This document shows, piece after piece, positions 1,101-59,368 of a DNA stretch of 64,000 nt (its first letter is position 1; every line of letters starts with the position of its first letter). The notes under the pieces are model-generated. The model worked only from the letters and a program-made list of their open reading frames with translations, did no database searches and was not told the DNA's origin. The stretch is taken from the IMG/VR virus record IMGVR_UViG_3300042540_001399, positions 226,888 to 290,887 of that record; one strand, 5' to 3'. Both the position numbers and the translations under genes were made by a program.

Positions 1101-1145
1101 CAAAAGTATTGAATATTTTAAAACAGAAATTATTATTTATAATAT

Positions 1146-1219
1146 GCACCCGTAGCTCAGCTGGATAGAGCAACTGCCTTCTAAGCAGTAGGTCAATGGT
1201 TCGAATCCATTCGGGTGTA
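1146..1219 (+). tRNA. tRNA-Arg(TCT)
   Basis: Acceptor GCACCCG/CGGGTGT, anticodon arm ACTGC-CTTCTAA-GCAGT, T loop TTCGAAT. Confidence 0.95.
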
Positions 1220-1260
1220 CTTTTTTTTTATTTTTTTTTTGGAAATCAAAAAGTTTCCTG

Positions 1261-1268
1261 TATCTTTG
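1261..1268 (+). promoter_or_regulatory. Bacteroidota-type -7 promoter element (TAnnTTTG)
   Basis: TATCTTTG 23 nt upstream of the ATG at 1292. Confidence 0.5.
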
Positions 1269-1291
1269 TTGAAATAAATAACGATAAAGAT

Positions 1292-2041
1292 ATGACAACA
1301 GACATCACAGCACAGGTAAAAAATTACAACGGTAAAAATTCATTCATTTTGAAAATGAAAGACGCAATTAGTAAATATGGATCACTTACTGTGAACCAAA
1401 AATCTGCAGTAGAAAAAATTTTTAAGAATGTTGATGAAGTAAAGTCAGTTGAAATGACTGAAGATCTTAAGAAAATTGCATCCTATGACGGGCCAAATTC
1501 TTTTGTTTTGGATATTAAAAATAAACTTACTCAATATGGTAAACTTTCTGAAAAACAAATTTCGGCTGGTTTGAAGCAAATCGACAAAGAACAAAACAAA
1601 ACTGTTGTTCGTAAAGTTAATGTACCAGCAATTGGTGATACTATCAAAGTTGGTAGAAAAATTGGTCAACAACTTAAAGAAAAATACGGTCTTAATTTTA
1701 ACCCAATTTTGTTGGACATCACAAAAGTTTTATCGTTTTCTGCTAAAGCTGTAAAATTTTCAGGTAAAATGACCGTAAAACGTGGTGACGTTTGTGTGTG
1801 TTGTGCAAAAACTCTTACCGATGAGTTTTCAATGTTAACTAAAATGGGTAAGACATGTGCGAAACACATGGGTGTTGAGTACATCACAGACGCAAGTGAG
1901 GCGGATAAATTCCGTGAAGAGTACCTACGTCGTGTTGAAGAAATTGGTGAAATGGAATTTTGGGTTCCAAATTCCCAAATTAAATCTTGGGAAGGAGACA
2001 CTAATGTTCTTCAAAAAATGTCACACCTTTGGTTCAAATAA
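1292..2041 (+). CDS. Hypothetical protein with C-terminal DUF6011-like zinc-finger
   Basis: CxxC...LTD..S...MG..C motif (CVCCAKTLTDEFSMLTKMGKTC); start moved to ATG 1292 because the track's 1196 start lies inside tRNA-Arg. Confidence 0.7.
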   Translation: MTTDITAQVKNYNGKNSFILKMKDAISKYGSLTVNQKSAVEKIFKNVDEVKSVEMTEDLKKIASYDGPNSFVLDIKNKLTQYGKLSEKQISAGLKQIDKEQNKTVVRKVNVPAIGDTIKVGRKIGQQLKEKYGLNFNPILLDITKVLSFSAKAVKFSGKMTVKRGDVCVCCAKTLTDEFSMLTKMGKTCAKHMGVEYITDASEADKFREEYLRRVEEIGEMEFWVPNSQIKSWEGDTNVLQKMSHLWFK

Positions 2042-2136
2042 AAAAAAAGTGGGGTTTGTTCATCAATAGAACGGCCCCACTCATTTTGTATTTTTTTGTT
2101 AAAATTTTTTATTATTTATATTATAAACATCATCAC

Positions 2137-2226
2137 ATGGACAACTCAATCATAGCGGCAATATTAACACCAATAGTTCTATTTGGTATTTTTCTTTATT
2201 TCTACTTTACAGATAAAGAATACTAA
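2137..2226 (+). CDS. 29-aa single-pass membrane peptide
   Basis: MDNSIIAAILTPIVLFGIFLYFYFTDKEY; TATTTAT motif at 2113-2119. Confidence 0.45.
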   Translation: MDNSIIAAILTPIVLFGIFLYFYFTDKEY

Positions 2227-2230
2227 AGTT

Positions 2231-2839
2231 TTATTTTATATCGGTAGACTCTAAAAGTGTGTAAGAAAATTTGTTACCATGGATTTTTGCCGCTTTTTTA
2301 CATATTGACATAAATTCATCAAAATCTTTAACTCTTTTAAATACCTGACATCCTTCGGACCAATTTTCAACCCAAGTCGAGTCCTGACCGGCTTTGTGTA
2401 TGTTAATACCAAACATTCCTGTGTCTGTTTTAGTTTCTTCAAAAATTAAATCTTTATTAGAATCTCTCCAAACTGTTACATTACCTAATCTTTGGCAAAG
2501 AGCGTCGTATTTCCCTTGATGTTTATCAATTTTCCAAACACCTCGATACTGGCCGGGTACTAATCTTGCAACGCCATTTTTGTTGTGAAATTCCATGACC
2601 CCTTTTTTACCAGGATCACATGTTGCCATCCAACAATGAAATTTCCAACTGCCTGTTTCGTCTTTATAAGTTATCGTTAGACAATCATCAAAAACATTTG
2701 TGACTTTGTCAGCAACACTTGGTTCATTATTTCTAACACCAACAATATTTACATCATAACCTTTGTTAGATGCGTCGTCAAACCATTTAAAATTTTTTGA
2801 TTTGACAGTAGTTTCTATTTGTTCTTTTGTATAACACAT
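2231..2839 (-). CDS. L,D-transpeptidase (YkuD)-like protein
   Basis: C-terminal GINIH...WSEGCQV resembles the H-x(14-17)-S-x-G-C catalytic motif. Confidence 0.5.
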   Translation of the reverse strand: MCYTKEQIETTVKSKNFKWFDDASNKGYDVNIVGVRNNEPSVADKVTNVFDDCLTITYKDETGSWKFHCWMATCDPGKKGVMEFHNKNGVARLVPGQYRGVWKIDKHQGKYDALCQRLGNVTVWRDSNKDLIFEETKTDTGMFGINIHKAGQDSTWVENWSEGCQVFKRVKDFDEFMSICKKAAKIHGNKFSYTLLESTDIK

Positions 2840-2904
2840 AATATATTTTTTTTTATAAATATAAAGTTTTTCAAAAAGTAAATAGTTTGATAATATTTAT
2901 TAAT

Positions 2905-4662
2905 ATGTCAAAATTGTCTAAAGTATCTTTTTTTATTTCGATAGTGATTATGTCAATTTATTTTGTGACACAATCTTTACTTGTGACAGGAAACATAAGT
3001 TATAGTAAAAATATCGGTTATGCTGGATATATATGTTTTTTACTTTTTGTATCTTTTTTTGGGATTTACATTTATGAATATTTGAAAAAAAACAAAAAAA
3101 TAAAAAAAAGAAGTGATTACGTTAAAAAATTAAATGAAACATTAATATATCAATCATTAAATTCTTCTTTTTTCGAAGGTAACACGTCAGAAGGCGCTAA
3201 AGTTCTAACTAAAGAAGTCAGTAATTCAATCAATGCTGACAGATGCTCAGTTTGGTTGTACAATACAGACAGAACTTCAATTATTTGTCAACAATTGTAT
3301 TCCAAAAAAACTGACAGCTGGGAACAAAATTATGAATTATTAAAAGAAGATTATAAACCTTATTTTTTATCTCTTTTATTAAATCCTATCATAGTTGCAA
3401 ATGATGCAAGAAATCATAGTGCAACATCATGTTTTAAAGACACTTATCTTGACCCATTGGGTATTAAATCTATGCTTGATGTTCCCATTTCCTACAAGGG
3501 AGACACTATTGGGGTAATATGTATTGAAAATTTTGATTTTAGAATTTGGGACCAAGTTGAAATTGATTTTGCTCAAATGTTATCAGCATTATATTCATTT
3601 GCATATTCAATAAAAGAAAATAATAATGTTAATAAGACAATTGATGATATTGAAGGATTTATAGATCATTCGGTATTAGTAAGTAAAACGGATTCTAAGG
3701 GTAAGATAGTTTATGTGAATAAAAAGTTTGAAGATGTTTCTGGTTGGAAACTTAGTCAGGTAATAGGAAAAGATCATAACATTGTTAATTCAGGAAAACA
3801 TACCAAAAATTTTTGGAAAGACATGTATAAAACAACAGTAGAAAAAAGAAAGATTTGGAACCAAATAGTTACAAATAAAACAAAAAAAGGTGAACTTTAT
3901 TGGGTTGATTCTTATATAATGGCAGAATTTGACGAACAAGATTGTTTAAAAGGGTTTATGTCTATAAGGTATGATGTTACAGATTTGATAAAAAAAACTG
4001 AAGAAATAGCGAAGAAAAATGTTTATTTGGAACATGCCGCAAAAATATTAAGACATGATATGCATTCAGGAATTAATACTTACATACCAAGAGGGATAAG
4101 TTCGTTAGAAAGAAGATTGAGTGATAACCAAATTCAAGAATATAAATTGGAAGCCCCTTTGAAAATGTTGAAAGAAGGTCTCAAACACGCTCAGAAAGTT
4201 TATAAAGGTGTTTATGAATTTACTAATTTAGTAAAAAAAGATTCAGTGCTCAACAAAACTAAAGTAAACTTAAAAGAAATATTAGAAAGTTACCTATCAA
4301 CAACATCATATAAATCACAAGTTGTAATTGATACTTTAGAAGACCATGAAGTTAATGAACCTTTATTTTGTACCGCCATCGATAATTTAATTAGAAATGG
4401 CCTCAAATATAATGACAATGATAACAAATTTGTACATTTATATATGGAAGATTTTCAGTTGGTAATTCAGGATAATGGAAGGGGGCTGTCACAAGAAGAA
4501 TTTGACAATTTATCGAAACCATACGTAAGAAAAGAAAACCAAAAAGAAAGTGGTAGTGGTTTAGGTTTAAATATATGTTTAGCAATACTCAAAGAACACG
4601 GATTCAGCGTTTCTTGTGAAAAAAACCATATAGGCACTAAAATTAAAATTAAATTCAAATGA
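2905..4662 (+). CDS. Membrane sensor histidine kinase, 2TM-GAF-PAS-HisKA-HATPase (HK1)
   Basis: Two N-terminal TM helices; GAF (ADRCSVWL...IKSMLDVPI..GVICIE); PAS (YVNKKFEDVSGW..GKDHNIVNSG..NKTKKGELYWV); H box LRHDMH; N box NLIRNGLKYN; G1 QDNGRGL; G2 GSGLGLNIC; start set at ATG 2905. Confidence 0.92.
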   Translation: MSKLSKVSFFISIVIMSIYFVTQSLLVTGNISYSKNIGYAGYICFLLFVSFFGIYIYEYLKKNKKIKKRSDYVKKLNETLIYQSLNSSFFEGNTSEGAKVLTKEVSNSINADRCSVWLYNTDRTSIICQQLYSKKTDSWEQNYELLKEDYKPYFLSLLLNPIIVANDARNHSATSCFKDTYLDPLGIKSMLDVPISYKGDTIGVICIENFDFRIWDQVEIDFAQMLSALYSFAYSIKENNNVNKTIDDIEGFIDHSVLVSKTDSKGKIVYVNKKFEDVSGWKLSQVIGKDHNIVNSGKHTKNFWKDMYKTTVEKRKIWNQIVTNKTKKGELYWVDSYIMAEFDEQDCLKGFMSIRYDVTDLIKKTEEIAKKNVYLEHAAKILRHDMHSGINTYIPRGISSLERRLSDNQIQEYKLEAPLKMLKEGLKHAQKVYKGVYEFTNLVKKDSVLNKTKVNLKEILESYLSTTSYKSQVVIDTLEDHEVNEPLFCTAIDNLIRNGLKYNDNDNKFVHLYMEDFQLVIQDNGRGLSQEEFDNLSKPYVRKENQKESGSGLGLNICLAILKEHGFSVSCEKNHIGTKIKIKFK

Positions 4663-7843: not shown

Positions 7844-8680
7844 ATGTTACTTAAAGTAGGATCAGAAGGGGCTGATGTAAAAAAACTCCAAGAAAAATTA
7901 GGTGTTGAAACAATAGGAAAGTTTGGACCTAAAACCGAAGCTGCGGTAAAAGCATGGCAAAAAGCAAATGGATTAAAAGATGATGGTATTGTTGGTGATG
8001 CAACTTGGAGCAAAATGTTTGGGGAATCTACCCCAAAAACAAATGTTATTAAAGAAGATGTTGTTATACCAAGTGGTGGTCCTTTAAATATTGAAAAGTT
8101 AAAAGGACACATACCTGATTCTGTTTTGGCCCAAATTCCGGAAACCGCAAAAAAATTTAATATTACAAACAATTTAAGATTAGCACACTTTTTATCACAA
8201 TGTGGTCATGAATCTGGTGGATTCAAAGCTGTCAGTGAAAATTTAAATTATTCAGCCGATGGTTTAAAAAAGATTTTTGGAAAATACTTTCCGGGTAACC
8301 TGAATGAATCTTACGCTCGTAAACCCGAAAAAATTGCGTCCCGTGTTTATGGTAACAGGATGGGAAATGGTGATGAGGCGTCAGGCGAAGGATATAAATT
8401 CAGAGGTAGGGGTTACATCCAACTTACAGGAAAAAGTAACTATACAAATTTTTCTAAATTTATAGGTGAAGATTGTGTTTCAAATCCTGATTTAGTTGCA
8501 ACAAAATATCCTTTAGCGTCTGCGGCATTCTTTTTTGATTCAAATAAATTGTGGTCTATTTGTGACAAGGGAGCCGATGATGCCACTGTTACATCTGTAA
8601 CCAAAAGAGTTAATGGGGGAATTTTAGGTTTATCAGACAGAATTAAACACTTTAAAGAGTATTATAACCTTATTAAGTGA
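7844..8680 (+). CDS. Endolysin: peptidoglycan-binding domain plus glycoside hydrolase family 19
   Basis: PG_binding_1 (LKVGSEGADVKKLQEKL..GKFGPKTEAAVKAWQ..DGIVGDATW) and GH19 motifs (LAHFLSQCGHES, ENLNYS, FRGRGYIQLTGKSNY, TKRVNGG). Confidence 0.93.
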   Translation: MLLKVGSEGADVKKLQEKLGVETIGKFGPKTEAAVKAWQKANGLKDDGIVGDATWSKMFGESTPKTNVIKEDVVIPSGGPLNIEKLKGHIPDSVLAQIPETAKKFNITNNLRLAHFLSQCGHESGGFKAVSENLNYSADGLKKIFGKYFPGNLNESYARKPEKIASRVYGNRMGNGDEASGEGYKFRGRGYIQLTGKSNYTNFSKFIGEDCVSNPDLVATKYPLASAAFFFDSNKLWSICDKGADDATVTSVTKRVNGGILGLSDRIKHFKEYYNLIK

Positions 8681-8716
8681 TATTTATAATAAAATAAACC
8701 ATAAAAAACAAATTTT

Positions 8717-8884: not shown

Positions 8885-8901
8885 ATTGTGTAAATAGACT
8901 T

Positions 8902-8930
8902 AAAAACCCTCGATAATTTCGGGGGTTTTT
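8902..8930 (+). terminator. Rho-independent terminator
   Basis: AAAAACCCTCGA-TAAT-TTCGGGGGTTTTT hairpin with U tract. Confidence 0.75.
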
Positions 8931-8967
8931 ATTTTTGTAACATATTTATTATATAAAAATTAAATTT

Positions 8968-10234: not shown

Positions 10235-10269
10235 TTTTTTATTACAAAAAAATTTATTATTTTTGTAGT

Positions 10270-10758
10270 ATGAATATTTTTTTTCTTGACTACGATACCC
10301 AAAAATGTGCACAATATCATTGCGATAAACATGTGGTCAAGATGGTATTAGAAACTGCACAACTTTTATGTGGGGTTCATCATACAACCCCCCAAGTTAC
10401 CCCCCAAGTTCCCTACAAGTTATCCCACAAAAATCACCCATGCGCAATATGGACTCGTGAAAGTTTATCAAACTACTTATATCTTTGTGATCTTGGTTTA
10501 GAATTATGTAATGAATATAGTTTTAGATATGGTAAAACACATAAGTCACAACAAGTAATCGAGTGGTGTCTTGATAATAAACCAAACATAGTTGATAAAG
10601 GTTTTACCACACCACCAAAAGCAATGCCCGATGAATATAAAGTTTTTGACGTTATTGAATCTTATAGAAACTACTATCGTGGGGCAAAAAAAAGTTTTGC
10701 TTCATGGAAAAATAGACAAATACCCGATTGGTTTCAAACTGATGAAGTATTTATATGA
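10270..10758 (+). CDS. Pyrimidine-dimer DNA glycosylase / endonuclease V-like protein
   Basis: MNIFFLD..CAQYHCDKHVVKMVLETAQLL and HKNHPCAIW motifs of the Pyr_excise family; TATTTTTG promoter element at 10258. Confidence 0.8.
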   Translation: MNIFFLDYDTQKCAQYHCDKHVVKMVLETAQLLCGVHHTTPQVTPQVPYKLSHKNHPCAIWTRESLSNYLYLCDLGLELCNEYSFRYGKTHKSQQVIEWCLDNKPNIVDKGFTTPPKAMPDEYKVFDVIESYRNYYRGAKKSFASWKNRQIPDWFQTDEVFI

Positions 10759-12296: not shown

Positions 12297-12358
12297 TTTT
12301 TTTTTAGTACCTATTGTTTTATAGTTTTATTATTTATATAATTAAAAAAAAAGAAAAA

Positions 12359-12502
12359 ATGGAAGATATCAATCAATTAGAAAATGAAATTTTTGCCTAC
12401 ATCAATGATAAAGGTCAAGAAGTTTTTACACCTAATTTTGAATTTGCGAACATCATGGCAAAAAAATATGGTACTTTAAAAGTTTTTGTACAAAAATTTT
12501 AA
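12359..12502 (+). CDS. Small hypothetical protein (47 aa)
   Basis: ATG at 12359 after A-rich leader; TATTTAT at 12331. Confidence 0.5.
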   Translation: MEDINQLENEIFAYINDKGQEVFTPNFEFANIMAKKYGTLKVFVQKF

Positions 12503-12521
12503 AAAAAAAATTACAAAGTAC

Positions 12522-12552
12522 TTGACAGATACAAATAAATGTAGTAACTTTG
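12522..12552 (+). promoter_or_regulatory. Promoter upstream of the large ncRNA
   Basis: TTGACA (12522-12527), 17-nt spacer, TAACTTTG (12545-12552), which also matches the Bacteroidota TAnnTTTG element. Confidence 0.6.
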
Positions 12553-12559
12553 TAAAACA

Positions 12560-13490
12560 AATCAGGAAAAGACCTGAAACGTTCTTTGAAAAATAGATTA
12601 TCCGTTCAGGAAAAGTTTTGTCAGATTCTATGACAAGTAATTGGAATGAAATTTCCATCTTTGAATGATAAAGATATTGGGCCGTGTATAGTCCATAAAA
12701 TAAACTACGAAAGTAGGATAAAGTGAACCCTTAAGTGTGTTGGGTTTGCGGCTTCTTCGGGAGCTTGAGTACACAAGCGGGATACCATTTTGGCTTTAGT
12801 ATTGAGGGCAACGCTGTAAAGAATAAGGCAAAATGATTTGGCGATGTGGGTCGTCTGATTGAGGTGGGAACACCAATAGGAATAACCCGTAGGAATATTG
12901 CAAGACTCAAAGTCATCCAACTTTAATATTGCGTTTTCCAATATAATAGGTTACTTAAAACCAAGTGGAAGGACCACAAGGTAAGATGTAGAACGAGTGG
13001 TGTCGCTAACATCCTTCACTCAGGTTTACCAAAACCCGGTGATGAAGTAGTCTAAAAATATGGAGGTAGGGATATCTCACGGAGTAGTTGAGTATCGACT
13101 CGTTCAAAAGATGGGTTGGCTCGGTTGGCGGACCACTACTTCGACAATCCACGACACAAAACTTATGACTATTGAATTAAGTCCATTAATTAATACATTA
13201 AGGAAAAGTGTCCGTCAGGTTTGGATGAAAGGTGACTACATAGTAATGAGCCGTTCATTGCACACAGAGATCCCAAGTCGATGTGTAATTATCCGAAAAA
13301 CCTTTAGTCCCGCAAGGACGAGTTGGGAAGGCATTCTCGAAAAGAGTAGATTAGGATGAGAGTAATTCAAACCTTAAGGAGTGGTAAACCTAAAAGACCG
13401 TCACTGAGAAATACTTCTCAAAAGGAAGTGGATAAGAGTAGAAACAATAATGACTCTAAAGGTTCTCACACAAACGTGTAATCTCAGCGT
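12560..13490 (+). ncRNA. Large structured ncRNA, GOLLD-like
   Basis: ~0.9 kb without a credible ORF, GC-richer than flanks, bracketed by promoter and terminator; tetraloop hairpins CTAC-GAAA-GTAG (12705-12716) and GCTTC-TTCG-GGAGC (12751-12764); long-range pairs GGAGTAG/CTACTTC (13081/13136) and CTGAGA/TCTCAG (13404/13482); boundaries approximate. Confidence 0.65.
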
Positions 13491-13523: not shown

Positions 13524-13545
13524 AGGGACTGATAGTCCCTTTTTT
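13524..13545 (+). terminator. Rho-independent terminator after the ncRNA
   Basis: AGGGACT-GAT-AGTCCCT followed by T tract. Confidence 0.75.
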
Positions 13546-13565
13546 GTTTTATAATATTTATATAT

Positions 13566-13775: not shown

Positions 13776-13848
13776 TTGCTTTTTCTGATTTATCATATAT
13801 TTATTATTAAAAATATAATAAAATAATAAAAAAAACAAAATTAAAATT

Positions 13849-15051: not shown

Positions 15052-15442
15052 TGGTGGAGGCGGAGGGACTCGAACCCTCGTCCATAATATCCTGTCAGAT
15101 AAGGACTACATGTTTAGGTTGATATTTTCTAATATCCCAAAATAGTTGATTTGTTCTTCACCATCGTAAATCAACAACCAATGGTCCCGAATCGGATTTA
15201 GAGAGCCATCCGGTGTGCTCTATCAAACTACGACTTCTGTTGCTAGGTTATATGTCTGCCGACCCCCCGTTTCCGTAAACTTCTTAAGCTACAGTAACTT
15301 CAGAACCTCTTACTAATCCAAGAGTTTCCATTTTGTTTAGCACATTGCCAGTTGTTTTCTAAGTCAGTTTTTAAAGAGATTAACTCAGTCCCTACATGCC
15401 CTTATTCTTCAGCCAATACCTGTCAAATCCAAAAACGCCCCC
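15052..15442 (-). ncRNA. ssrA: tmRNA
   Basis: 5' GGGGGCGTTTTTGGATTTGACAGG; 3' GAGGGTTCGAGTCCCTCCGCCTCCACCA; G3.U70 wobble in the acceptor stem; internal tag ORF 15349-15284. Confidence 0.93.
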
Positions 15443-15534
15443 ATATTTTCAATGAACTTTTAATATAAATATTATAAGTACAAATATAAGTACTATTTTA
15501 ATTATATCCAAATTTGGGTATATTTATTTTTAAG

Positions 15535-16614: not shown

Positions 16615-16643
16615 TTGTTAATTAATTTTCATAAATTTGTATA

Positions 16644-17429: not shown

Positions 17430-17457
17430 AAAAGGAGGACTTTTAATCCTCCTTTTT
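17428..17457. terminator. Bidirectional terminator
   Basis: AAAAAAGGAGGA-CTTTTAA-TCCTCCTTTTT between convergent peptidase and clpC genes. Confidence 0.75.
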
Positions 17458-20043: not shown

Positions 20044-20066
20044 ATCCACCGAAAGGTGGATTTTTT
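20044..20066 (+). terminator. Rho-independent terminator
   Basis: ATCCACC-GAAA-GGTGGAT followed by T tract. Confidence 0.8.
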
Positions 20067-20098
20067 ATTTATATCAATTATTTTAATTAAAAAAAATT

Positions 20099-20341
20099 AT
20101 GGCAATACTAAAAGAAGAAATAATAGGAACAAAAATCATAAATGAAATCCAATCATCAAATTTAGTTAAAACAGAGTATGATGTTGAGACTAAAAAATTA
20201 ATTGCTGAATTCAAAAACGGTATTAAGTATGTTTATGAAGATGTACCACATCAAAAATATACAGAATTCAGAATGGCGCCATCCCAAGGAACTTACTTTA
20301 ACAAAAACATTTCAAAGGTTTTCAAATATTCAAAAGTGTAA
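20099..20341 (+). CDS. KTSC-domain protein
   Basis: SSNL...YD.....L..EFKNG..Y.Y.DVP...Y..F..APSQGTYFNKNI pattern. Confidence 0.85.
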   Translation: MAILKEEIIGTKIINEIQSSNLVKTEYDVETKKLIAEFKNGIKYVYEDVPHQKYTEFRMAPSQGTYFNKNISKVFKYSKV

Positions 20342-20360
20342 GTTCAAAGTATTTATTAGT

Positions 20361-21098: not shown

Positions 21099-21174
21099 AT
21101 ATTATTAAAACAAAACAATATCAAATATCGATATATTTATTTAATAAAAATAATTTAATCAAAAAAAGTATACT

Positions 21175-25308: not shown

Positions 25309-25346
25309 AAATAAAAATTTGTTAGCTATTTATAAATAAAAACATT

Positions 25347-27119: not shown

Positions 27120-27130
27120 TATTTATAAAC

Positions 27131-29182: not shown

Positions 29183-29203
29183 TATTTATAAATAAAAAAA
29201 ATT

Positions 29204-30108: not shown

Positions 30109-30197
30109 ATGTGTTTAATAATTTTATTTATATTGATATATATTACAAATTTAAGTAAACTTATCCAAAATAAACTATTTTACTATGGAAAAAAAAT

Positions 30198-30665: not shown

Positions 30666-30686
30666 TATTTATTATAAAACTTTGAA

Positions 30687-31403: not shown

Positions 31404-31409
31404 TTAAAA

Positions 31410-31628: not shown

Positions 31629-31649
31629 AAATAAAAATCAAGAATTTTT

Positions 31650-31683
31650 AAAAAAGGGAATATGAATAATATTCCCTTTTTTT
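31650..31683 (+). terminator. Rho-independent terminator
   Basis: AAAAAGGGAATAT-GAATA-ATATTCCCTTTTTTT. Confidence 0.8.
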
Positions 31684-31751
31684 ATTACTATAACTAAAAA
31701 AAATGAATTTTTTATAAGTTACTAATATTTATTTGTTAAACAAACTTATAA

Positions 31752-33509: not shown

Positions 33510-33576
33510 ACTTTTTAACAAAACCGTATATTTATAATATACATAAATAAAAAAATAAAGCTAAAAACAAATAAAA

Positions 33577-35783: not shown

Positions 35784-35811
35784 AATAATTATTTGTGATA
35801 TTTATAAGATA

Positions 35812-37201: not shown

Positions 37202-37267
37202 TTTGTTGTATTTTATAATACTACAAATATATATAAAAAAAACTTAAATAAAAAAAAATAAATTATT

Positions 37268-39610: not shown

Positions 39611-39630
39611 TTATCTTTTTATAATAAATA

Positions 39631-41357: not shown

Positions 41358-43259
41358 TTATAATTTTTTTCCGCTTATGTTCATCGGCATAACCACACCA
41401 CCAGGTAACCATGTCCCATAACCTGACAATCCTTCTACTTTACTATTTTCATCTTCTTCTTTTTTGTTGGCCTTGAGTTGTGAAAACAAAGCCGCTAATC
41501 CTAAATTTGGTGTACCATCAGGCATTGGTCCTGTAGGCAATCCAATTTTTTGATATTCTTCGATAGAATTAACAAATGCTCTTGATGCTGAATACCCGCT
41601 TAGTAATTTTGTTGCGACTAGTAATGGTTTAGGAATCGTATCCCCAAAACCACTTATGGCGATTTTAAGTAGTTGTAATATTTCATCAACAACCCCTTTA
41701 CATTCTCTCCAATCTTTTATTAATCTGGCAACTGTAAGAATAATTTCTATTAGTCTTAAAATAATTCTAAGTCTTGTTTGTGACGTTTCTTTAGTAACAT
41801 CTAAGATTATTGCCTGTATTAAATTTTGTATATCTTTTTTAATAATTGTAAAAAGTTCTTGGATAAATATTGCCCCTATTTGAGACATTATTTCCATAAC
41901 AAGTCTAAAAAACTTTTTTACAAAATCCATTAATGATTTAACCAAGTCACCGATAGATGATCCTAAAGATTTCAACATGATCATTATTGGTAGTAGTACT
42001 TTGGGTGAAAACAATGCGTATAATATTGCTTTGGGTATACTTTTCAATAAACTCAAATCAAAACTAATTTTAATGCCAAAACCATTATCATTTGATCCAT
42101 TAACAACGGCTGAACTTGCATTTTCTATTGCAGTATCAATAGTTTGACCTGAAATAAAAATAAGGTCGATTATTGATTGTGTAATCAATTCTGAATTCAC
42201 AGGCACTTCTACGTTATCACAGTCCTCAAAAACAATTACACCTTGATAAATATTATTTATCCTTTCTTCTATTTGGAATAGATCAACACTTGTAAATTCA
42301 AAAAATGATTCGTCTACTTCATCTAATTCAGATGTCTTCGATGTTCCAGCAACATTTATTTCTTTGTTTGAATCAAAACATAAACCTAAAATTCTTTGTA
42401 GAATAATTTCAAACTTTGAAAAATCACCAATTTTTAAATTTCCTGTACCAGACTGTATTGATAGAAATCCCGTGAGAATTTCGAATAACATCGCAATCAC
42501 GTTATTGAAATCCAAAATATCTAAACTTGCATAATAATCTTTCAGGGCTTCTGATATTTTATTAATACCCGTGAACCTTGGTTGTAAAGTTACTTTAAAA
42601 AATTGACCAGGATTGTTGTTACCATCTTGTAATACATATTCAATATCGAAAAGATCTTGTCCAGATGCTCCTTTATAGTATTGACCGTATTCGTTGAAAT
42701 ATGACGTACCCAAAGATTGAATTCTATGGTACAGTTCCTTGTTCATTGCAAAGGGCACTGTACCAATATTTATTCCTTGTTTTTCATATAAAATGGCAAA
42801 CTTTTCATCTGCAGGATCTTTTTTCAATAAAGACAACAAATCAATAGATCTTACTGGAATATATATTGGTTGGTTAGGATTATATTCTTGGTCCAAACTA
42901 CAACCGATAGTATTGATAGCTTCTTTGATTAAAATTTCTGTAATCTTTGGTTTACAGTTTGCCAAAGCTCTAACAAAAACTTTTTTAAGATATTCAATTG
43001 TGTTTGCACCTTTTCTATTAGTCAAACTTGCAATTTCAACTAATTCATCAAGTTGGGTTTTTTGTTTTTTTTGGGATCTTTTTTTTTCTTTTTTTGCTTC
43101 AGACTTTGATCTTCTATTTTGTTTTGAATTAACTTCTTCGTTGTCACCTTTTTTTTTTGACAATTCTGCAACATCTTGTCTTACCTGATTGTAGGTTTTC
43201 GCAGCATTAATTTTACTTTTTACTTCACCGTAGCTAAAATTTAAATCTTGTGAAGGCAT
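41358..43259 (-). CDS. Large helical hypothetical protein
   Basis: 633-aa ORF in the operon; no recognised motif. Confidence 0.7.
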   Translation of the reverse strand: MPSQDLNFSYGEVKSKINAAKTYNQVRQDVAELSKKKGDNEEVNSKQNRRSKSEAKKEKKRSQKKQKTQLDELVEIASLTNRKGANTIEYLKKVFVRALANCKPKITEILIKEAINTIGCSLDQEYNPNQPIYIPVRSIDLLSLLKKDPADEKFAILYEKQGINIGTVPFAMNKELYHRIQSLGTSYFNEYGQYYKGASGQDLFDIEYVLQDGNNNPGQFFKVTLQPRFTGINKISEALKDYYASLDILDFNNVIAMLFEILTGFLSIQSGTGNLKIGDFSKFEIILQRILGLCFDSNKEINVAGTSKTSELDEVDESFFEFTSVDLFQIEERINNIYQGVIVFEDCDNVEVPVNSELITQSIIDLIFISGQTIDTAIENASSAVVNGSNDNGFGIKISFDLSLLKSIPKAILYALFSPKVLLPIMIMLKSLGSSIGDLVKSLMDFVKKFFRLVMEIMSQIGAIFIQELFTIIKKDIQNLIQAIILDVTKETSQTRLRIILRLIEIILTVARLIKDWRECKGVVDEILQLLKIAISGFGDTIPKPLLVATKLLSGYSASRAFVNSIEEYQKIGLPTGPMPDGTPNLGLAALFSQLKANKKEEDENSKVEGLSGYGTWLPGGVVMPMNISGKKL

Positions 43260-43627
43260 TATTTATTGAGTTTGTAACTTTTATCGTCAGTGTCTTTATC
43301 AATCAAAGATTGTAGGATATCATCATTCATGTCTAAATCAGACAAAGTAAAATTATCTTGTTTTTCTTGTGACTTCTGCCATATCTGAGCTTGAAGCTTT
43401 GATAAGGACAACTTTTTTTCTACACAATCGTTAATGATCTTTTGTTGCTTTTCAATTACAGGACCAATGAGAGTCATGTCTTCAGGTTCCTTCATCATAG
43501 TCAACATTTTATTTTGTATCCTTATGGCGGTACTTCTTTGTTCTACAATTTCATTGTAAATTTCTTGCATCAAAGAAAGTAAGGAATCTTTGGTTAGGTT
43601 AATTTCTTTTTTTGTTGGTCTTGGCAT
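43259..43627 (-). CDS. Hypothetical coiled-coil protein
   Basis: ATG ORF; TATTTAT on the minus strand at 43632-43638. Confidence 0.7.
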   Translation of the reverse strand: MPRPTKKEINLTKDSLLSLMQEIYNEIVEQRSTAIRIQNKMLTMMKEPEDMTLIGPVIEKQQKIINDCVEKKLSLSKLQAQIWQKSQEKQDNFTLSDLDMNDDILQSLIDKDTDDKSYKLNK

Positions 43628-43647
43628 AACTATAAATATTTTTATTT

Positions 43648-44397
43648 CTATTTTAACATATCATTAATTATTTCTTGATAAATTTTCTTGTATCTCTTCA
43701 AAGAATTTCTAATTTCTTTTGTAGAAAGATTAGTCATTTCTCGTATTTCAAACAAAACAACATTTTTATTAAACTTGTTGTTGTTCGAATTATCAACAAA
43801 TATATTATTATAGTTACGGAATATTTCCATAAGAGCTTGACCTAGCTTCATTTCTTGTTCACTAATTGATTTATCGTCCATAGAATCTGTAAGTTTAATA
43901 ATAAATTTATTTATTATTTCTTCAGTAGATATACTATCATCGTCTATATGATAAATCATATCAGGGGCATTATGTAAATCCGCAGAAATATCTTCATATG
44001 AAACTTTACGATTCATATCTTTTTGATCTTTCAGTATTTGGCCCATTAAATAATTTTTACATATAGTACCAAAATATGAATATGCCTTTTTTTCTTTTGA
44101 TGGTTTAAATTTATCAATTTTTGTCATCAAAAAAGAATGAGTGTCAACATGGATTTCATTAAAATCCATATCTTTTCTGTATAATTTATATCGTCTTATA
44201 ATTGACGATATCATTTTATCCAAGGGAAATCTTAAATATTCATTATAAATTTTATTCTTTTCATCCATAGTGTTCGCAGTTAAAAACATCCTAACTGCGT
44301 TTTCTTCTGGTTCATCAAAATAATTATTTAACTTAGGTTTCCTTCCCTTCTTTTTCTTTTCATTCTGGGTTTCGTTTAAATCTAATTTTAATTCCAT
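43648..44397 (-). CDS. Putative late-transcription sigma factor (gp55-like)
   Basis: KFKPSKEKKAYSYFGTICKNYL resembles the region-2 motif (FDPEK..PFAYFTQI) of T4-like late sigma factors; C-terminal helix-turn-helix-like segment. Confidence 0.6.
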   Translation of the reverse strand: MELKLDLNETQNEKKKKGRKPKLNNYFDEPEENAVRMFLTANTMDEKNKIYNEYLRFPLDKMISSIIRRYKLYRKDMDFNEIHVDTHSFLMTKIDKFKPSKEKKAYSYFGTICKNYLMGQILKDQKDMNRKVSYEDISADLHNAPDMIYHIDDDSISTEEIINKFIIKLTDSMDDKSISEQEMKLGQALMEIFRNYNNIFVDNSNNNKFNKNVVLFEIREMTNLSTKEIRNSLKRYKKIYQEIINDMLK

Positions 44398-56556: not shown

Positions 56557-56576
56557 AATTTATAAAGAATATGATT

Positions 56577-57179
56577 TTACTTGGCTATTTTTTTTACTTT
56601 TAAAAGTTTCCCTTCAAATATATGTTGACCAACTCTAAACTTAAAAATGTCATTAGTTTTTGATTCAGATTCTGTTAAAAGTCCATTTTCTCTTAAAACA
56701 TCTTGAACAGTTTCTCTAACAATATTTCTAATTGTGTTTTCGTTTAAACTTTTATTTTGTATATTACTTTCTAAAAGTTGTGTTTGCATTCTTTGTGGAC
56801 TTGTAGGATCCCCTTTTGCATTTACATTCATAAGTCTTGATGCTTTTTCCACAAGGTCATCAGATAGTACTGAACTATTCATTGGGTTAGATGGTTGTTG
56901 GATAGGATGCTCAATCATTAATTTTTTTATTTCATCGGGAAGTCTAGAATTTAAAATTTTATCTTCAGTATTTTCGTATTGTACCTGTTGTTTCCTTACA
57001 GCTTCTTCTGACAAATATTCTTGTGGAATATTATAACTTGCATTCATTGGTTGATAAGATTCTACATCTACGGTATTCGCCGAAGATTCTTTTACAGTGT
57101 TACGACCTATATCATCGTGTCTTTGCATTATTTTTTTTGATATTGCCAGTTTTTGTAATAGTGCTTGTTCTGTGTTCAT
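56577..57179 (-). CDS. Hypothetical protein
   Basis: 200-aa ORF; C-terminal IRNIVRETVQDVLRENGLLTES motif. Confidence 0.7.
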   Translation of the reverse strand: MNTEQALLQKLAISKKIMQRHDDIGRNTVKESSANTVDVESYQPMNASYNIPQEYLSEEAVRKQQVQYENTEDKILNSRLPDEIKKLMIEHPIQQPSNPMNSSVLSDDLVEKASRLMNVNAKGDPTSPQRMQTQLLESNIQNKSLNENTIRNIVRETVQDVLRENGLLTESESKTNDIFKFRVGQHIFEGKLLKVKKIAK

Positions 57180-57190
57180 AATATTTTTTT

Positions 57191-57574
57191 TTAATCAAAA
57201 ATTGCGTTAATTATAACTCTTGACATACTTTTATCACCATTTGGGTTGTAGTTTGGTCTTGGTTCGTTAAATTTTTCCATTGTTGGTTTAAGTGCTATTA
57301 TTTTATCAACTCTAAACAAACGCCAACTTGGAAGTGGTTTTTTTCCCTTATAAGATCTATGAGAAGCACCTTCCATGTCCCAAGCCCTTAAAACGGGATT
57401 ATTTGCCTTACTATAACCAAAACAAACCGGCTCTATAATTCTTAAACCTTTACCGCCTGGTTCATCACCATCGTAATAAACTATCACTCGACGTTTTTTT
57501 TTAATTGCATCGACGATAGTTGATATTGATGCTACCTCAACGATAATATCTTTAAAAGAATTGTAAAGTTTCAT
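57191..57574 (-). CDS. Stand-alone WYL-like domain protein
   Basis: VYYDG....LRIIEPVCFG....VLRAW....WRLFRVDKIIAL matches the WYL pattern. Confidence 0.7.
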   Translation of the reverse strand: MKLYNSFKDIIVEVASISTIVDAIKKKRRVIVYYDGDEPGGKGLRIIEPVCFGYSKANNPVLRAWDMEGASHRSYKGKKPLPSWRLFRVDKIIALKPTMEKFNEPRPNYNPNGDKSMSRVIINAIFD

Positions 57575-57864
57575 TATTGTAAAGATGCGTAAGGATATGG
57601 GTTATCTGCTTTATATTTATTAATCACAATTTCCGACTTCCTTTCCAATACGTCAGTTTTGGTACCACCGTTTGCGGTATCTAAAAAGACACCAGTACCT
57701 CTACCTTTTTCGTCACCATCACTTAGAGCATCTTTATTAGTTGACGAATATTGGTTTTCGGTTTTATAATCATTTTTTGGGATCAATTTTTTTCTTTCTT
57801 GATCTGCGTATTTTGTCAACAAATTATTAGGTTGACTATAATCCATAGGTTCTAATGTTGGCAT
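57574..57864 (-). CDS. Hypothetical protein
   Basis: ATG ORF in the operon. Confidence 0.7.
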   Translation of the reverse strand: MPTLEPMDYSQPNNLLTKYADQERKKLIPKNDYKTENQYSSTNKDALSDGDEKGRGTGVFLDTANGGTKTDVLERKSEIVINKYKADNPYPYASLQ

Positions 57865-57865
57865 T

Positions 57866-58327
57866 TTAAAGTGTTTTTTTAATTAAATCGTTTATCCTTA
57901 TTAGGTTTTCTTTTATTTTTAAATTATCAGTTTCATCACCAGGATCAAACTCACTCGCTAAAGGTCCTAAGTCTTTTAAAAAGTTTTTATCAACCGGTTC
58001 TTCAGGCATATATTCATTTTCTATTTTTTTTGTGAAGTCATCACCATCTCTTAAATTTTTTATTGTGTTCGTAACCCAATTTCTCATTGTGTCACCTCCA
58101 TTTAAAACATAAGGGGCGTCTTCTTTGTTACCATTATAATATCTAAACCAATTGTCAATTCTTTCGAGTTGTTGAAATGTTGCTTGTTTAGAAGATCTTA
58201 AATCTTCATTTCTTTTGTGACCTTCTATCGAAGAATCTGAATTAGGCACTCTTTCGAAACAAATAGTCAAATGATCCAAAATTTCTTTTGGTATATAAAT
58301 AATTTTATTATATAAATTTTTATTCAC
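57866..58327 (-). CDS. Hypothetical protein
   Basis: ATG ORF in the operon. Confidence 0.7.
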   Translation of the reverse strand: MNKNLYNKIIYIPKEILDHLTICFERVPNSDSSIEGHKRNEDLRSSKQATFQQLERIDNWFRYYNGNKEDAPYVLNGGDTMRNWVTNTIKNLRDGDDFTKKIENEYMPEEPVDKNFLKDLGPLASEFDPGDETDNLKIKENLIRINDLIKKTL

Positions 58328-59315
58328 CTTTTTTTAGAATTTGTACTAATTTGTTTATATTAATAGATTCTTTTTCAGCAATTTTTTTAATTGATTGTAA
58401 ATTCCTTTTTATAATTTTAAAAACAATATTTTCTGAATTAGTATCTTCTTTTTCTTTTTTTACAATATCATCATTATTTGTTTTTTTATTCAATAGAATT
58501 TCATCAATTATAGTATCAATTTTTTCTTTTTCTAATTCAGATAATCTCCTTTTTGTAAAACAGTTTTTACATTTACCTTGTCTTTTTTCTTGTTTTAACT
58601 GTCTATCTAACTTTTTATCAAACCCCAATCTCTTCAATCTTATATCCCGATCTATTGGGTCTTCTACATCCAATTTATTTTTTAATATTTTATTTGCCTG
58701 ATTGTAAGTTTTTGCATTTTTAGTTTCTTGAAAACCAAAAGATTCCGATTGATCCACTTCATCGATAGTTGGTTTGTCTTCTTCAGACTCACCGTAATAA
58801 ACCCTAATAAATGGAAATTGACTTACCCTTGACATTCTTGCGGTTTGGTCCATAGTTTTTCTTGGATGATGACTCAATTTAAGTAACGGTACATTCGATC
58901 CTATAGGGGACCCATCATCTGTTACTAATTCATCTATTTCAGTTTTGGATTGTTTTTCGGTTTCTTTTTTATATTTTTCAGGAATTTTACTATTCAATTT
59001 AATTCCGAGTTTTTCACTTAATTTCAAAATAAATGGAGTTGCGATACTTGAACCTGGAACTAATTGGAATACAATCAAAGGAATTAATTTTAAAATATCA
59101 GAAGACTGATCTTTGATAAATTTTTTTTCATCATCCTTCAAATCAAAATCTTTTTTCTTTAGATAGTCCTTAGTTGCGGATATTAATATTTTCACAAGTA
59201 ATCTTGTTTCTTTCATTTCACTGATTGCGGAATCTTTGTATTTTTTGAGCGTACTAATAACTGAACCCGTGTTTTTTGGTTTGTCTTCATTTAGTAAATT
59301 ATTTGAATATGACAT
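58320..59315 (-). CDS. Hypothetical protein with a hydrophobic LETM1-like segment
   Basis: DILKLIPLIVFQLVPGSSIATPFILKL; TATTTAT on the minus strand at 59330-59336. Confidence 0.6.
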   Translation of the reverse strand: MSYSNNLLNEDKPKNTGSVISTLKKYKDSAISEMKETRLLVKILISATKDYLKKKDFDLKDDEKKFIKDQSSDILKLIPLIVFQLVPGSSIATPFILKLSEKLGIKLNSKIPEKYKKETEKQSKTEIDELVTDDGSPIGSNVPLLKLSHHPRKTMDQTARMSRVSQFPFIRVYYGESEEDKPTIDEVDQSESFGFQETKNAKTYNQANKILKNKLDVEDPIDRDIRLKRLGFDKKLDRQLKQEKRQGKCKNCFTKRRLSELEKEKIDTIIDEILLNKKTNNDDIVKKEKEDTNSENIVFKIIKRNLQSIKKIAEKESININKLVQILKKGE

Positions 59316-59368
59316 AAACAGTTTTTTATATAAATACTTTGATCTGTTGTATTTATTAAATAAAAAGA

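What the first reader, a model, noticed from the sequence alone, without database searches (positions are those of the whole stretch)
1134..59356. Conserved TATTTAT motif upstream of more than 20 genes: candidate late promoter, the reverse complement of T4's TATAAATA
Seen on the coding strand within ~50 nt of starts: 1134 (tRNA-Arg), 2113, 2894 (HK1), 8681, 8943, 10748, 12331, 13555, 13798, 15521, 20350, 21134, 25327 (terminase), 27120, 29183, 30666 (protease), 31726, 33529 (capsid), 35799, 59350. On the minus strand: 2855, 15465 (tmRNA), 39624, 43632, 59330. A gp55-like sigma is encoded at 43648-44397. Inference: this is the recognition element of the phage late sigma. The genome is AT-rich, so enrichment needs a formal test.
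Basis: partly seen in the sequence, partly recalled or inferred. Interest (0 to 1): 0.6.

Follow-up and report, generated by a model that had tools for sequence, protein, structure and literature searches.

The report
Phage-specific TATTTAT promoter element
An exact 7-base word, TATTTAT, sits just upstream of about 100 genes of this 291-kb freshwater T4-like phage and of its cultured relatives, and is most likely the -10-type promoter read by a phage-encoded sigma factor distantly like T4 gp55.

Summary
All 25 listed sites are exact TATTTAT, and 24 lie 0-44 nt upstream of a same-strand gene or RNA. In the window there are 24 sense hits within 50 nt of starts, against 4.1±2.0 in shuffles. In the whole 290,887-bp genome there are 99, against 15.3±3.9.

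The word is strand-specific (74 sense, 10 antisense in unidirectional spacers) and nearly invariant. It is depleted on the sense strand inside genes, common in divergent spacers and rare in convergent ones. It lies 4-7 or 12-16 nt before the ATG and has no -35 partner.

It is conserved at the same position in 74 of 80 metagenomic relatives. It also precedes terminase, portal, sheath and tube genes in Flavobacterium phage immuto and Microcystis phage Mel-JY01.

All these phages encode a homologue of ORF 43648-44397. Its N-terminal domain has a sigma region-2 fold (top structural hit T4 gp55, tied with cellular sigmas), and it carries a sigma-4-like C-terminal domain that gp55 lacks. The two cultured phages have no other detectable sigma gene.

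Best reading: a phage-sigma promoter. "Late-only" timing is unproven, and the reverse-complement relation to T4 has no mechanistic meaning. This is a new variant of a known kind.

The parts
1134..1140 (+). TATTTAT, 5 nt before mature tRNA-Arg (1146)
2113..2119 (+). TATTTAT, 21 nt before a 29-aa hydrophobic ORF (2141-2229); weakest listed site
2855..2861 (-). TATTTAT, 15 nt before ORF 2231-2839(-); half of a divergent promoter pair with 2894
2894..2900 (+). TATTTAT, 4 nt before ATG 2905 of the GAF-PAS-HATPase histidine kinase (predicted leaderless)
8681..8687 (+). TATTTAT abutting the stop of ORF 7844-8680, 29 nt before the 55-aa ORF at 8717
8943..8949 (+). TATTTAT, 18 nt before ORF 8968. It follows the terminator 8901-8931 and a host-type box at 8930-8937 (possible dual promoter)
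10748..10754 (+). TATTTAT directly abutting ATG 10755, inside the upstream ORF; off-class spacing, possibly chance
12331..12337 (+). TATTTAT, 21 nt before the 47-aa ORF at 12359; nearest sense copy upstream of the GOLLD RNA
13555..13561 (+). TATTTAT, 4 nt before ATG 13566, 15 nt after the terminator 13524-13540
13798..13804 (+). TATTTAT, 44 nt before ORF 13849
15465..15471 (-). TATTTAT, 22 nt before the tmRNA (15052-15442, -); a host-type box lies at 15481-15488
15521..15527 (+). TATTTAT, 7 nt before ATG 15535
20066..20072 (+).
20350..20356 (+). TATTTAT, 4 nt before ATG 20361; suggests the gene is 20361-21098 rather than the longer TTG/ATG frames
21134..21140 (+). TATTTAT, 34 nt before ORF 21175
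25327..25333 (+). TATTTAT, 13 nt before the large terminase gene (25347); part of the palindrome TATTTATAAATA
27120..27126 (+). TATTTAT abutting the terminase stop, 4 nt before the 57-aa ORF at 27131, which precedes the portal gene 27362-29182
29183..29189 (+). TATTTAT abutting the portal stop, 14 nt before ORF 29204
30666..30672 (+). TATTTAT, 14 nt before the prohead protease gene (30687; T4 gp21-like)
31726..31732 (+). TATTTAT, 19 nt before ORF 31752. Metatranscriptome contigs begin just downstream, with none in 31401-31600
33529..33535 (+). TATTTAT, 41 nt before the major capsid gene (33577). Relatives seen in RNA contigs have other spacers here without the word, so this copy is not conserved
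35799..35805 (+). TATTTAT, 6 nt before ATG 35812
39624..39630 (-). TATTTAT, 13 nt before ORF 38147-39610(-)
43632..43638 (-). TATTTAT between the sigma gene's stop and ATG 43627 (4 nt) of a conserved 122-aa gene. An exact copy is kept here in 74 of 80 relatives, in immuto and in Mel-JY01
59330..59336 (-). TATTTAT, 14 nt before ORF 58320-59315(-); divergent pair with 59350
59350..59356 (+). TATTTAT, 12 nt before the 958-aa ORF at 59369
43648..44397 (-). Candidate cognate sigma (P0001, 249 aa). Residues 25-125 form a sigma region-2 fold; the top hit is T4 gp55. Residues 153-249 are sigma-4-like. The gene is translationally coupled to the upstream glycosyltransferase gene
43259..43627 (-). Conserved small gene (P0271, 122 aa, N-terminus MPRP..KKEI) always placed after the sigma gene and behind a TATTTAT; function unknown
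10258..10265 (+). Candidate host-type (Bacteroidota sigma-A -7 box) TATTTTTG, 4 nt before ATG 10270; second promoter class
16632..16639 (+). Candidate host-type box TAAATTTG, 4 nt before ATG 16644
37224..37231 (-). Candidate host-type box TATATTTG, 22 nt before ORF 36767-37201(-)

Best explanation
TATTTAT (consensus A-TATTTAT-A/T) is the -10-type core of a phage-specific promoter class. Host core RNA polymerase, carrying the phage sigma encoded at 43648-44397 (P0001 family), would recognise it without a conserved -35 element, as T4 gp55 recognises TATAAATA.

Transcription would start about 5 nt downstream of the word. That gives leaderless mRNAs where the spacing to the ATG is 4-7 nt, and A-rich leaders of about 8-11 nt where it is 12-16 nt. 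This fits a host that does not use Shine-Dalgarno sequences.

Genes with a Bacteroidota sigma-A type box (TAnnTTTG) would be read first by the unmodified host enzyme. The TATTTAT class then takes over and drives all identifiable virion genes, and many others.

Shown by computation: enrichment, strand and position specificity, counter-selection inside genes, conservation across relatives, co-occurrence with the sigma family, and the sigma fold.

Inferred: that it is a promoter at all (no start sites were mapped), which sigma reads it, where transcription starts, and the timing.
For: Enrichment and direction:
- 99 against 15.3±3.9 genome-wide, and 24 against 4.1±2.0 in the window.
- 74 sense, 10 antisense in unidirectional spacers.
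- 36 copies in 3.6 kb of divergent spacers (23 of 31 regions) against 5 in 2.6 kb of convergent ones. No upstream transcript would normally run through a divergent spacer to be processed, so this favours a promoter.
- Sense-strand depletion inside genes: 69 against 102±9 codon shuffles; antisense 85 against 97±10.
- One-mismatch variants show no clear strand bias, so the 7-mer is near-invariant.

Anatomy:
- A at -1 in 68% of sites, no -35-like conservation.
- Sharp bimodal spacing: 34 sites at 4-7 nt, 38 at 12-16 nt, 2 at 8-11 nt.
- Sites sit directly after terminators or stop codons.

Conservation:
- The same bimodal spacing in 80 related contigs.
- An exact copy 4-5 nt before the ATG after the sigma gene in 74 of 80, while the spacer varies from 8 to 46 nt.
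- Flavobacterium phage immuto: 15 against 1.9±1.3. Microcystis phage Mel-JY01: 9 against 1.4±1.2. In both, the word precedes annotated terminase, portal-position and sheath genes, and in Mel-JY01 the tube gene.
- Leader length shifts with the host: 17-18 nt in immuto, and 33-37 nt with GGAG-like sites in the cyanophage. This argues for a transcription signal rather than a translation signal.

Sigma:
- Both cultured phages have a P0001 homologue (E 1e-36 and 3e-30) and no PF04542 match.
- The P0001 model has pLDDT 90.7. The best of 48,161 chains is T4 gp55, 7d7d_F (Z 10.8, rmsd 2.6 Å, 96 residues).
- hhalign to gp55 is collinear over 114 columns, E 2.4e-4.
- The gp55 HMM phrog_234 hits only this ORF in the genome.
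- The ESM Atlas places it in viral clusters auto-named sigma factor.

Host context:
- No Shine-Dalgarno signal (GGAG in 1 of 357 upstream regions).
- The Flavobacterium sigma-A box lies at -12 to -5 (PMC9723704). A box plus 4 nt plus ATG therefore implies a leaderless start.

Method control: the same script run on 94 kb of T4 recovers ATAAATA and TATAAAT as the top words.
Against: - No transcription start site was mapped. The only RNA data are assembled metatranscriptome contigs, which cannot show 5' ends.
- Sigma assignment rests on co-occurrence in two cultured phages plus metagenomic relatives, not on binding data.
- Sequence similarity of P0001 to gp55 is weak: phrog_234 scores 18 bits, and that model also matches 8 of 14 control bacterial genomes. 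hhalign probability is 43%. The structural Z for gp55 is tied, within 1 unit, with sigma-B and pro-sigma-K.
- P0001 has a sigma-4-like domain, yet no -35 element is seen.
- The motif also precedes replication genes, a tRNA and the tmRNA, so it is not a purely late signal.
- The capsid-gene copy (33529) is absent in close relatives.
- A 4-nt spacing needs a start site closer to the element than in T4.
Confidence: 0.72

Rival explanations
1. The motif is a promoter, but it is read by the phage's second, canonical sigma-70-family protein (genome 99846-100646; regions 1.2, 2 and 4). P0001 would do something else.
For: That gene exists and scores well above Pfam cut-offs (62.6 bits; r1.2+r2+r4). 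It lies behind a host-type TATCTTTG box, as an early-expressed regulator would.
Against: Phages immuto and Mel-JY01 use the same word upstream of virion genes but have no PF04542 match at E<=0.1. Both keep a P0001 homologue. A canonical r4 domain would usually come with a -35 element, and none is seen.
Confidence: 0.1
2. The motif is a variant -7/-10 box read by the host's own primary or alternative sigma, with no phage factor involved.
For: In one register it resembles the Bacteroidota box (TAnnTTTG against TATTTATw; both have TA, two free bases, then T-rich). It also shows the same 4-nt spacing to the ATG as the host-type boxes.
Against: The same exact word is used by phages of a Flavobacterium and of a cyanobacterium, hosts whose primary-sigma consensus differs. 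Within this genome a separate TAnnTTTG class exists, nearly exclusive of it: 5 genes have both, out of 41 and 100. E. coli-type sigma-70 promoters are not enriched.
Confidence: 0.08
3. The word acts in RNA (UAUUUAU) as a processing or translation signal. For example, it could be a cleavage site for a host or phage endoribonuclease that trims polycistronic transcripts to short or absent leaders.
For: The spacing to the start codon is very tight. The word is AU-rich and single-strand-prone. Sense-strand depletion inside genes would also be expected for a cleavage site.
Against: It is densest in divergent spacers, where no upstream transcript should exist. It lies directly after intrinsic terminators. 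It precedes tRNA and tmRNA genes. Its distance to the ATG changes from 4-16 nt to 17-18 nt and 33-37 nt in relatives.
Confidence: 0.07
4. The pattern is a by-product of AT-rich, low-complexity intergenic DNA and has no function.
For: Intergenic GC is only 25%. Many A/T words are common upstream of genes.
Against: z=21.5 against dinucleotide shuffles of the same upstream windows. There is a 7:1 strand bias. One-mismatch words of the same composition show no clear bias. Orthologous positions are conserved within variable spacers.
Confidence: 0.02

Closest known systems
Bacteriophage T4 late promoters (TATAAATA) read by gp55, with gp33 and the gp45 sliding clamp
   Same: A T4-like phage (gp23-type capsid, gp17, gp20, gp21, gp18, gp25 and gp6 homologues). 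A single short, near-invariant A/T-only -10-type word with no -35 conservation (T4 described in PMC7892883). It lies upstream of virion genes. The phage sigma has a region-2 domain whose top structural hit is gp55. The words share 6 of 8 positions when read in the same direction.
   Different: The word is TATTTAT(A/T), not TATAAATA; T4's word is not enriched in the sense direction here, and the reverse holds in T4. The sigma is 249 aa against 185 aa and carries a sigma-4-like domain, which in T4 is functionally replaced by gp33 on the beta flap. No gp45-family clamp was detected. The element lies closer to the coding start (4-7 or 12-16 nt), with no Shine-Dalgarno. It also precedes non-structural genes and stable RNAs.
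Bacteroidota primary-sigma promoters (-33 TTTG / -7 TAnnTTTG)
   Same: The likely host phylum: no Shine-Dalgarno and SprB/CHU_C type IX secretion domains in phage proteins. An A/T-rich box probably occupies about -12 to -5 (PMC9723704). A candidate class of such boxes (TAT.TTTGT) is present in the same genome upstream of other genes.
   Different: TATTTAT does not fit TAnnTTTG (no G; A at the sixth position). The two classes rarely share a gene. TATTTAT is also used by a cyanophage relative. Evidence for the host-type class is itself modest: 14 sense, 4 antisense, p=0.03.
Two-domain (ECF-like, group 4) sigma factors
   Same: P0001 has a sigma-2 plus sigma-4 architecture of similar size. It gives a weak TIGR02937 match over residues 61-238 and whole-length structural alignments to sigma-B, sigma-32, sigma-E, SigW and SigK.
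   Different: It scores below every curated cut-off (18.7 against 42.9 bits; PF04542 13.4 against 24). ECF promoters have conserved -35 (AAC) and -10 (CGT) boxes; here there is one A/T word and no -35.

Membership tests
T4-type late promoter | Non-template word TATAAATA at the -10 position | tested here: not met
   The word is TATTTAT(A/T). TATAAATA is 5 sense, 38 antisense in unidirectional spacers. The T4 control gives the opposite.
T4-type late promoter | No conserved -35 element | tested here: met
   Profile of 109 sites: only A at -1 and a weak T-rich patch at -13 to -16.
T4-type late promoter | Fixed distance to the transcription start site | not testable with these tools
   Only assembled metatranscriptome contigs were available. 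The position is inferred from the 4-7 nt spacing to the ATG.
T4-type late promoter | Drives late (virion) genes, after DNA replication | tested here: inconclusive
   It precedes 7 of 7 T4-core virion genes or their operons, but also the helicase, DNA polymerase, a tRNA and the tmRNA. No timing data.
T4-type late promoter | Activation by the sliding clamp gp45 and co-activator gp33 | tested here: inconclusive
   No phrog_223 match at E<=1 in the genome. gp33 was not searched. Absence in so divergent a phage is weak evidence.
gp55 family (phrog_234) | Significant match to the family profile | tested here: inconclusive
   E 2.8e-4, 18.3 bits, the only hit in the genome; but the model also matches 8 of 14 control bacterial genomes. 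hhalign to T4 gp55: probability 43%, E 2.4e-4. PDB profile search: gp55 at E 0.22.
gp55 family (phrog_234) | Sigma region-2 homology fold that binds the clamp helices | tested here: met
   Model residues 25-125 against 7d7d_F: Z 10.8, rmsd 2.6 Å, 96 residues; top of 48,161 chains, tied within 1 Z unit with sigma-B and pro-sigma-K.
gp55 family (phrog_234) | Single-domain protein without region 4 (gp33 takes the flap) | tested here: not met
   Residues 153-249 form a confident helical domain that matches sigma region 4 (3mzy Z 5.4, 2h27 Z 5.1, 6ono Z 4.9). TIGR02937 covers residues 61-238.
Sigma-70 family (PF04542 / TIGR02937) | Score above the curated cut-offs | tested here: not met
   PF04542: 13.4 bits against 24. 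TIGR02937: 18.7 against 42.9. No Pfam or PHROG family in direct scans. The fold evidence nevertheless places it in the superfamily.
Bacteroidota sigma-A promoter | -7 box TAnnTTTG | tested here: not met
   TATTTAT lacks the G and has A where T is required. Genes with TA..TTTG and genes with TATTTAT overlap in only 5 cases.

The most novel reading that the evidence does not exclude
The P0001 family (over 1,100 clusters at 50% identity, all unannotated or mis-annotated) is a sigma that keeps a region-4-like domain next to a gp55-like region 2. It would be a one-polypeptide counterpart of T4's gp55 plus gp33, working without a sliding clamp. Together with its invariant TATTTAT word it would form a host-independent transcription module, kept intact across phages of two bacterial phyla (Bacteroidota and Cyanobacteria). 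In the Bacteroidota phages it would produce mostly leaderless or roughly 10-nt-leader mRNAs, far more than the 5.5% leaderless mRNAs reported for a Flavobacterium host.
Probability: 0.3. Interest if true: 0.7.

Novelty: new variant of a known kind. Interest (0 to 1): 0.56.

Why it matters
- **Annotation.** It would give a ready rule for transcription units and true start codons in a very abundant, almost unannotated group of freshwater and marine T4-like and jumbo phages. More than 7,900 homologues of the sigma were found at 90% clustering.
- **Evolution of late transcription.** It would show that the T4 late-transcription design (-10-only promoter plus a minimal phage sigma) exists in a diverged form with a different word and a two-domain sigma. 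That bears on how gp55, gp33 and gp45 evolved.
- **Tools.** It would offer a compact, apparently host-phylum-independent promoter/sigma pair for genetics in Bacteroidota, where standard expression signals fail.
- **Gene expression.** It points to unusually heavy use of leaderless or very short-leader mRNAs by a phage.

Tried and rejected
- Megablast of the structural block against 50,697 phage records found no match.
- Direct Pfam and PHROG scans of P0001 found nothing. phmmer against PDB gave only noise. T4 gp55 as a protein query against the genome found nothing. phrog_12791 found nothing.
- Foldseek against PDB gave E>0.05, although nearly all of the top 50 were sigma factors.
- hhalign of the P0001 family against the phage's canonical sigma gave probability 0.2%, so the two are not close paralogues.
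- ARAGORN did not find the tmRNA; Rfam did.
- RNA evidence: 20 metatranscriptome runs hold parts of the stretch, but all are kept as contigs. The one read-laying run (6,000 letters) showed presence in RNA libraries over 31756-35000 and no usable 5' ends.
- A third upstream motif, for the canonical sigma, was sought among 83 spacers lacking both words. Nothing recurrent was seen by eye.
- Functional sorting of motif-bearing against motif-less genes with Pfam failed: 15 of 20 large proteins had no family. tblastn against 94 kb of T4 gave only 9 core genes.
- The E. coli-type sigma-70 scan showed no enrichment (94 against 100±10).
- Literature: no paper in the library links TATTTAT to a phage promoter, or describes promoters or sigma factors of immuto-like or Mel-JY01-like phages.
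- No alternative genetic code was used.

Full report
**Setting.** The window is the last 64 kb of a single 290,887-bp virus contig with 31% GC, estimated 99% complete. It is a T4-like phage. It has a gp23-type capsid protein and a T4-type terminase. It also has homologues of T4 gp18, gp41, gp25, gp6, gp61, gp17, gp20, gp21 and gp23. No close DNA relative is in the phage collection. The nearest capsid proteins belong to an uncultured huge phage, Microcystis phage Mel-JY01 and Flavobacterium phage immuto, at 41-46% identity. Upstream regions carry no Shine-Dalgarno signal: GGAG occurs in 1 of 357, and G is at most 14% at any upstream position. Phage proteins carry SprB repeats and a CHU_C type IX secretion signal. 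The host is therefore very likely a member of the Bacteroidota. Aquatic, riverine and freshwater metatranscriptomes hold the sequence.

- In the window, 24 sense copies lie within 50 nt of 82 starts, against 4.06±1.98 in 1000 dinucleotide-preserving shuffles of those same upstream pieces (maximum 12).
- Over the genome, 99 copies against 15.3±3.9 (z=21.5). TATTTAT is the most over-represented of the 40 commonest upstream 7-mers, followed only by words that overlap it.
- In spacers between co-directional genes: 74 sense, 10 antisense (p=3e-13).
- Divergent spacers hold 36 copies in 3.6 kb (23 of 31 regions). Convergent spacers hold 5 in 2.6 kb.
- Inside genes the sense-strand word is depleted: 69 against 102±9 codon shuffles. 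The antisense word is not: 85 against 97±10.
- One-mismatch variants show no clear strand bias, so the 7-mer is practically invariant.
- The same script run on 94 kb of T4 returns ATAAATA and TATAAAT as the top words, so the method finds a known late promoter.

**Anatomy.** The extended consensus is A (68%) - TATTTAT - A/T. There is no -35-like conservation and only a weak T-rich patch 13-16 nt upstream. Several copies abut the preceding stop codon or follow an intrinsic terminator by 12-15 nt.

The distance from the last T to the ATG is sharply bimodal. There are 34 sites at 4-7 nt, 38 at 12-16 nt, and two at 8-11 nt. The same pattern holds in 80 related contigs.

A second, weaker word class is present: TAnnTTTG, here mostly TAT.TTTGT. 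It lies upstream of other genes, often exactly 4 nt before the ATG. It is the Bacteroidota sigma-A -7 box, which lies at -12 to -5 in Flavobacterium psychrophilum start-site maps (PMC9723704). A 4-nt spacing therefore implies a leaderless mRNA. Its strand bias is only modest (14 sense, 4 antisense, p=0.03), so I treat this class as a candidate. The two classes rarely share a gene: 5 genes have both, out of 41 and 100.

By analogy, TATTTAT at 4-7 nt predicts leaderless mRNAs, and at 12-16 nt predicts leaders of about 8-11 nt. That is far more than the 5.5% leaderless mRNAs reported for the Flavobacterium host.

**Conservation.** I fetched 80 IMG/VR loci encoding a relative of ORF 43648-44397, at 53-90% identity. 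In 74 of them an exact TATTTAT lies 4-5 nt before the ATG of the next gene. The rest of that spacer varies in length (8-46 nt) and in sequence. Three of the six exceptions have a one-base variant.

In the cultured Flavobacterium phage immuto, the word precedes the annotated terminase, gp20-like portal, tail-fibre, structural-protein and tail-sheath genes. There are 15 copies against 1.87±1.31 expected.

In Microcystis phage Mel-JY01, the word precedes the terminase gene, the gene in the portal position, the gene just upstream of the sheath gene, the tube gene and others. There are 9 copies against 1.44±1.17.

In both phages a copy again sits directly after the sigma-like gene. Leader length differs by phage: 17-18 nt in immuto, and 33-37 nt with GGAG-like sites in the cyanophage. 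A word that is kept while its distance to the start codon changes with the host's mode of translation is a transcription signal, not a translation signal. A word shared by phages of two phyla is unlikely to be a host-sigma site.

**The sigma.** ORF 43648-44397 (P0001, 249 aa) has no Pfam or PHROG family in direct scans. The evidence that it is a sigma is as follows:
- A weak TIGR02937 match, E 1e-3, over residues 61-238.
- A local BLASTP match to T4 gp55 across the region 2.3/2.4-like segment.
- The only phrog_234 (gp55 family) hit in the genome, E 2.8e-4. That model is unspecific, however, and also matches 8 of 14 control bacterial genomes.
- A profile built from 75 diverse homologues hits cyanobacterial SigA region 2 at E 2.5e-3 and gp55 at E 0.22. 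It aligns collinearly with gp55 over 114 columns (hhalign E 2.4e-4, probability 43%).
- The AlphaFold model is confident (pLDDT 90.7). Of 48,161 chains, the best match is gp55 in the T4 late-transcription complex, 7d7d_F: Z 10.8, rmsd 2.6 Å, residues 25-125. Region-2 domains of many sigmas follow closely and are tied within 1 Z unit.
- Residues 153-249 match sigma region 4 at Z about 5. Whole-length alignments to sigma-B, sigma-32 and sigma-S cover both domains.
- The ESM Atlas places it in viral clusters auto-named sigma factor.

P0001 is therefore a sigma-superfamily protein with a gp55-like region 2. Unlike gp55, it has a region-4-like domain. In T4 that role on the beta flap is taken by gp33 (PMC7892883). 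No gp45-family clamp was detected. The gene is translationally coupled to the upstream gene in nearly all relatives and has no promoter word of its own.

**Which sigma reads the word?** The genome also encodes a canonical sigma-70-family protein with regions 1.2, 2 and 4, at genome 99846-100646. It lies behind a host-type box. Immuto and Mel-JY01 keep both the word and a P0001 homologue (E 1e-36 and 3e-30) but have no PF04542 match. This co-occurrence favours P0001. It rests on two genomes and is an inference.

**Timing.** All seven T4-core virion genes that I could identify are behind the word, directly or through an operon: sheath, gp25/gp6, terminase, portal, protease and capsid. So are the gp41-like helicase (24 nt), the family-B DNA polymerase (56 nt, plus a TAAATTTG box 100 nt upstream), tRNA-Arg, the tmRNA and a histidine kinase. 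Long stretches lack the word: about 132-151 kb of the genome, and the minus-strand block at window 36.8-59.3 kb. "Late" is plausible for most sites but unproven. "Middle plus late" or "phage-specific" fits equally well.

**RNA data.** Four aquatic metatranscriptomes hold 26-54% of the words of 29000-35000, but only as contigs. Contigs cover 31756-35000, with none in 31401-31600. Two of them, if collinear, would begin just after the motif at 31726. This is compatible with a start there, but it is not evidence of one. Variant spacers upstream of the capsid gene in relatives lack the word, so the 33529 copy is not conserved.

**Relation to T4.** TATTTATA is indeed the reverse complement of TATAAATA; it is the template strand in the T4 oligonucleotides of PMC7892883. 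Here, however, the word lies on the coding strand, and T4's word is counter-oriented (5 sense, 38 antisense). T4 shows the mirror image. Read in the same direction, the two 8-mers differ only at positions 4 and 5 (AA against TT). The resemblance is one of design: a -10-only, all-A/T, near-invariant word read by a minimal phage sigma. It is not identity of the word.

**Verdict.** I rate "phage-specific -10-type promoter element" at about 0.72 overall, somewhat less for the step "read by P0001", and about 0.4 for "late-specific". I found no description of this word or this sigma family in the searchable literature. It is a new variant of a known kind.

Noticed in passing
window 13080-13490 (+): A full-length match to the GOLLD RNA family (RF02032, 320 bits, model 1-416 of 416), followed by a terminator at 13524-13540. 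The ORFs called at 13060-13359, 12476-12658(-) and 12705-12941(-) are probably spurious and may cover the RNA's variable 5' half. The nearest upstream sense TATTTAT is at 12331.
   Followed up: partly
window 15052-15442 (-): A phage-encoded tmRNA (RF00023, 114 bits) that ARAGORN missed. It is preceded by both a host-type box (15481-15488) and a TATTTAT (15465), a possible dual promoter.
   Followed up: partly
genome 99846-100646 (+), outside the window (L003:1330-2130): A second, canonical sigma-70-family gene (regions 1.2, 2 and 4; 266 aa) in an operon behind a TATCTTTG box. It is absent from immuto and Mel-JY01. Its target promoters are unknown; no third motif was found.
   Followed up: partly
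window 43259-43627 (-): A conserved 122-aa gene (N-terminus MPRP..KKEI) always lies directly downstream of the sigma gene, behind a TATTTAT at leaderless spacing. A small gene holds the same position in immuto, but with no detectable sequence similarity. It could be a co-factor or regulator of the sigma. This was not tested.
   Followed up: no
window 2905-4662 (+) and 17443-19503 (-): The phage encodes a GAF-PAS-HATPase histidine kinase with no obvious partner regulator nearby, and a ClpB-like double AAA+ chaperone (686 aa).
   Followed up: no
genome 74722-77484 and 200436-202892 (L094, L101): Large phage proteins carry SprB repeats, a PKD-like domain and a CHU_C type IX secretion signal domain. 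These are Bacteroidota hallmarks and point to the host phylum.
   Followed up: partly
window 25327-25338 and 29183-29194 (+): At two sites the word is part of the perfect palindrome TATTTATAAATA. That palindrome also contains T4's TATAAATA in the sense direction, upstream of the terminase gene and of the gene after portal.
   Followed up: no
P0001 family in public databases: Many members of this sigma-like family are labelled by one source as 'predicted SprT family Zn-dependent metalloprotease'. Nothing found here supports that label.
   Followed up: no
window 20099-21098 (+): The motif at 20350, 4 nt before ATG 20361, suggests two genes (20099-20341 and 20361-21098) rather than the longer overlapping frame starting at 20202 or 20229. 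The word may help to fix start codons elsewhere.
   Followed up: partly
window 59369-62245 (+): A 958-aa protein with a C-terminal papain-like (Peptidase_C1) domain, behind a TATTTAT at 12 nt.
   Followed up: no
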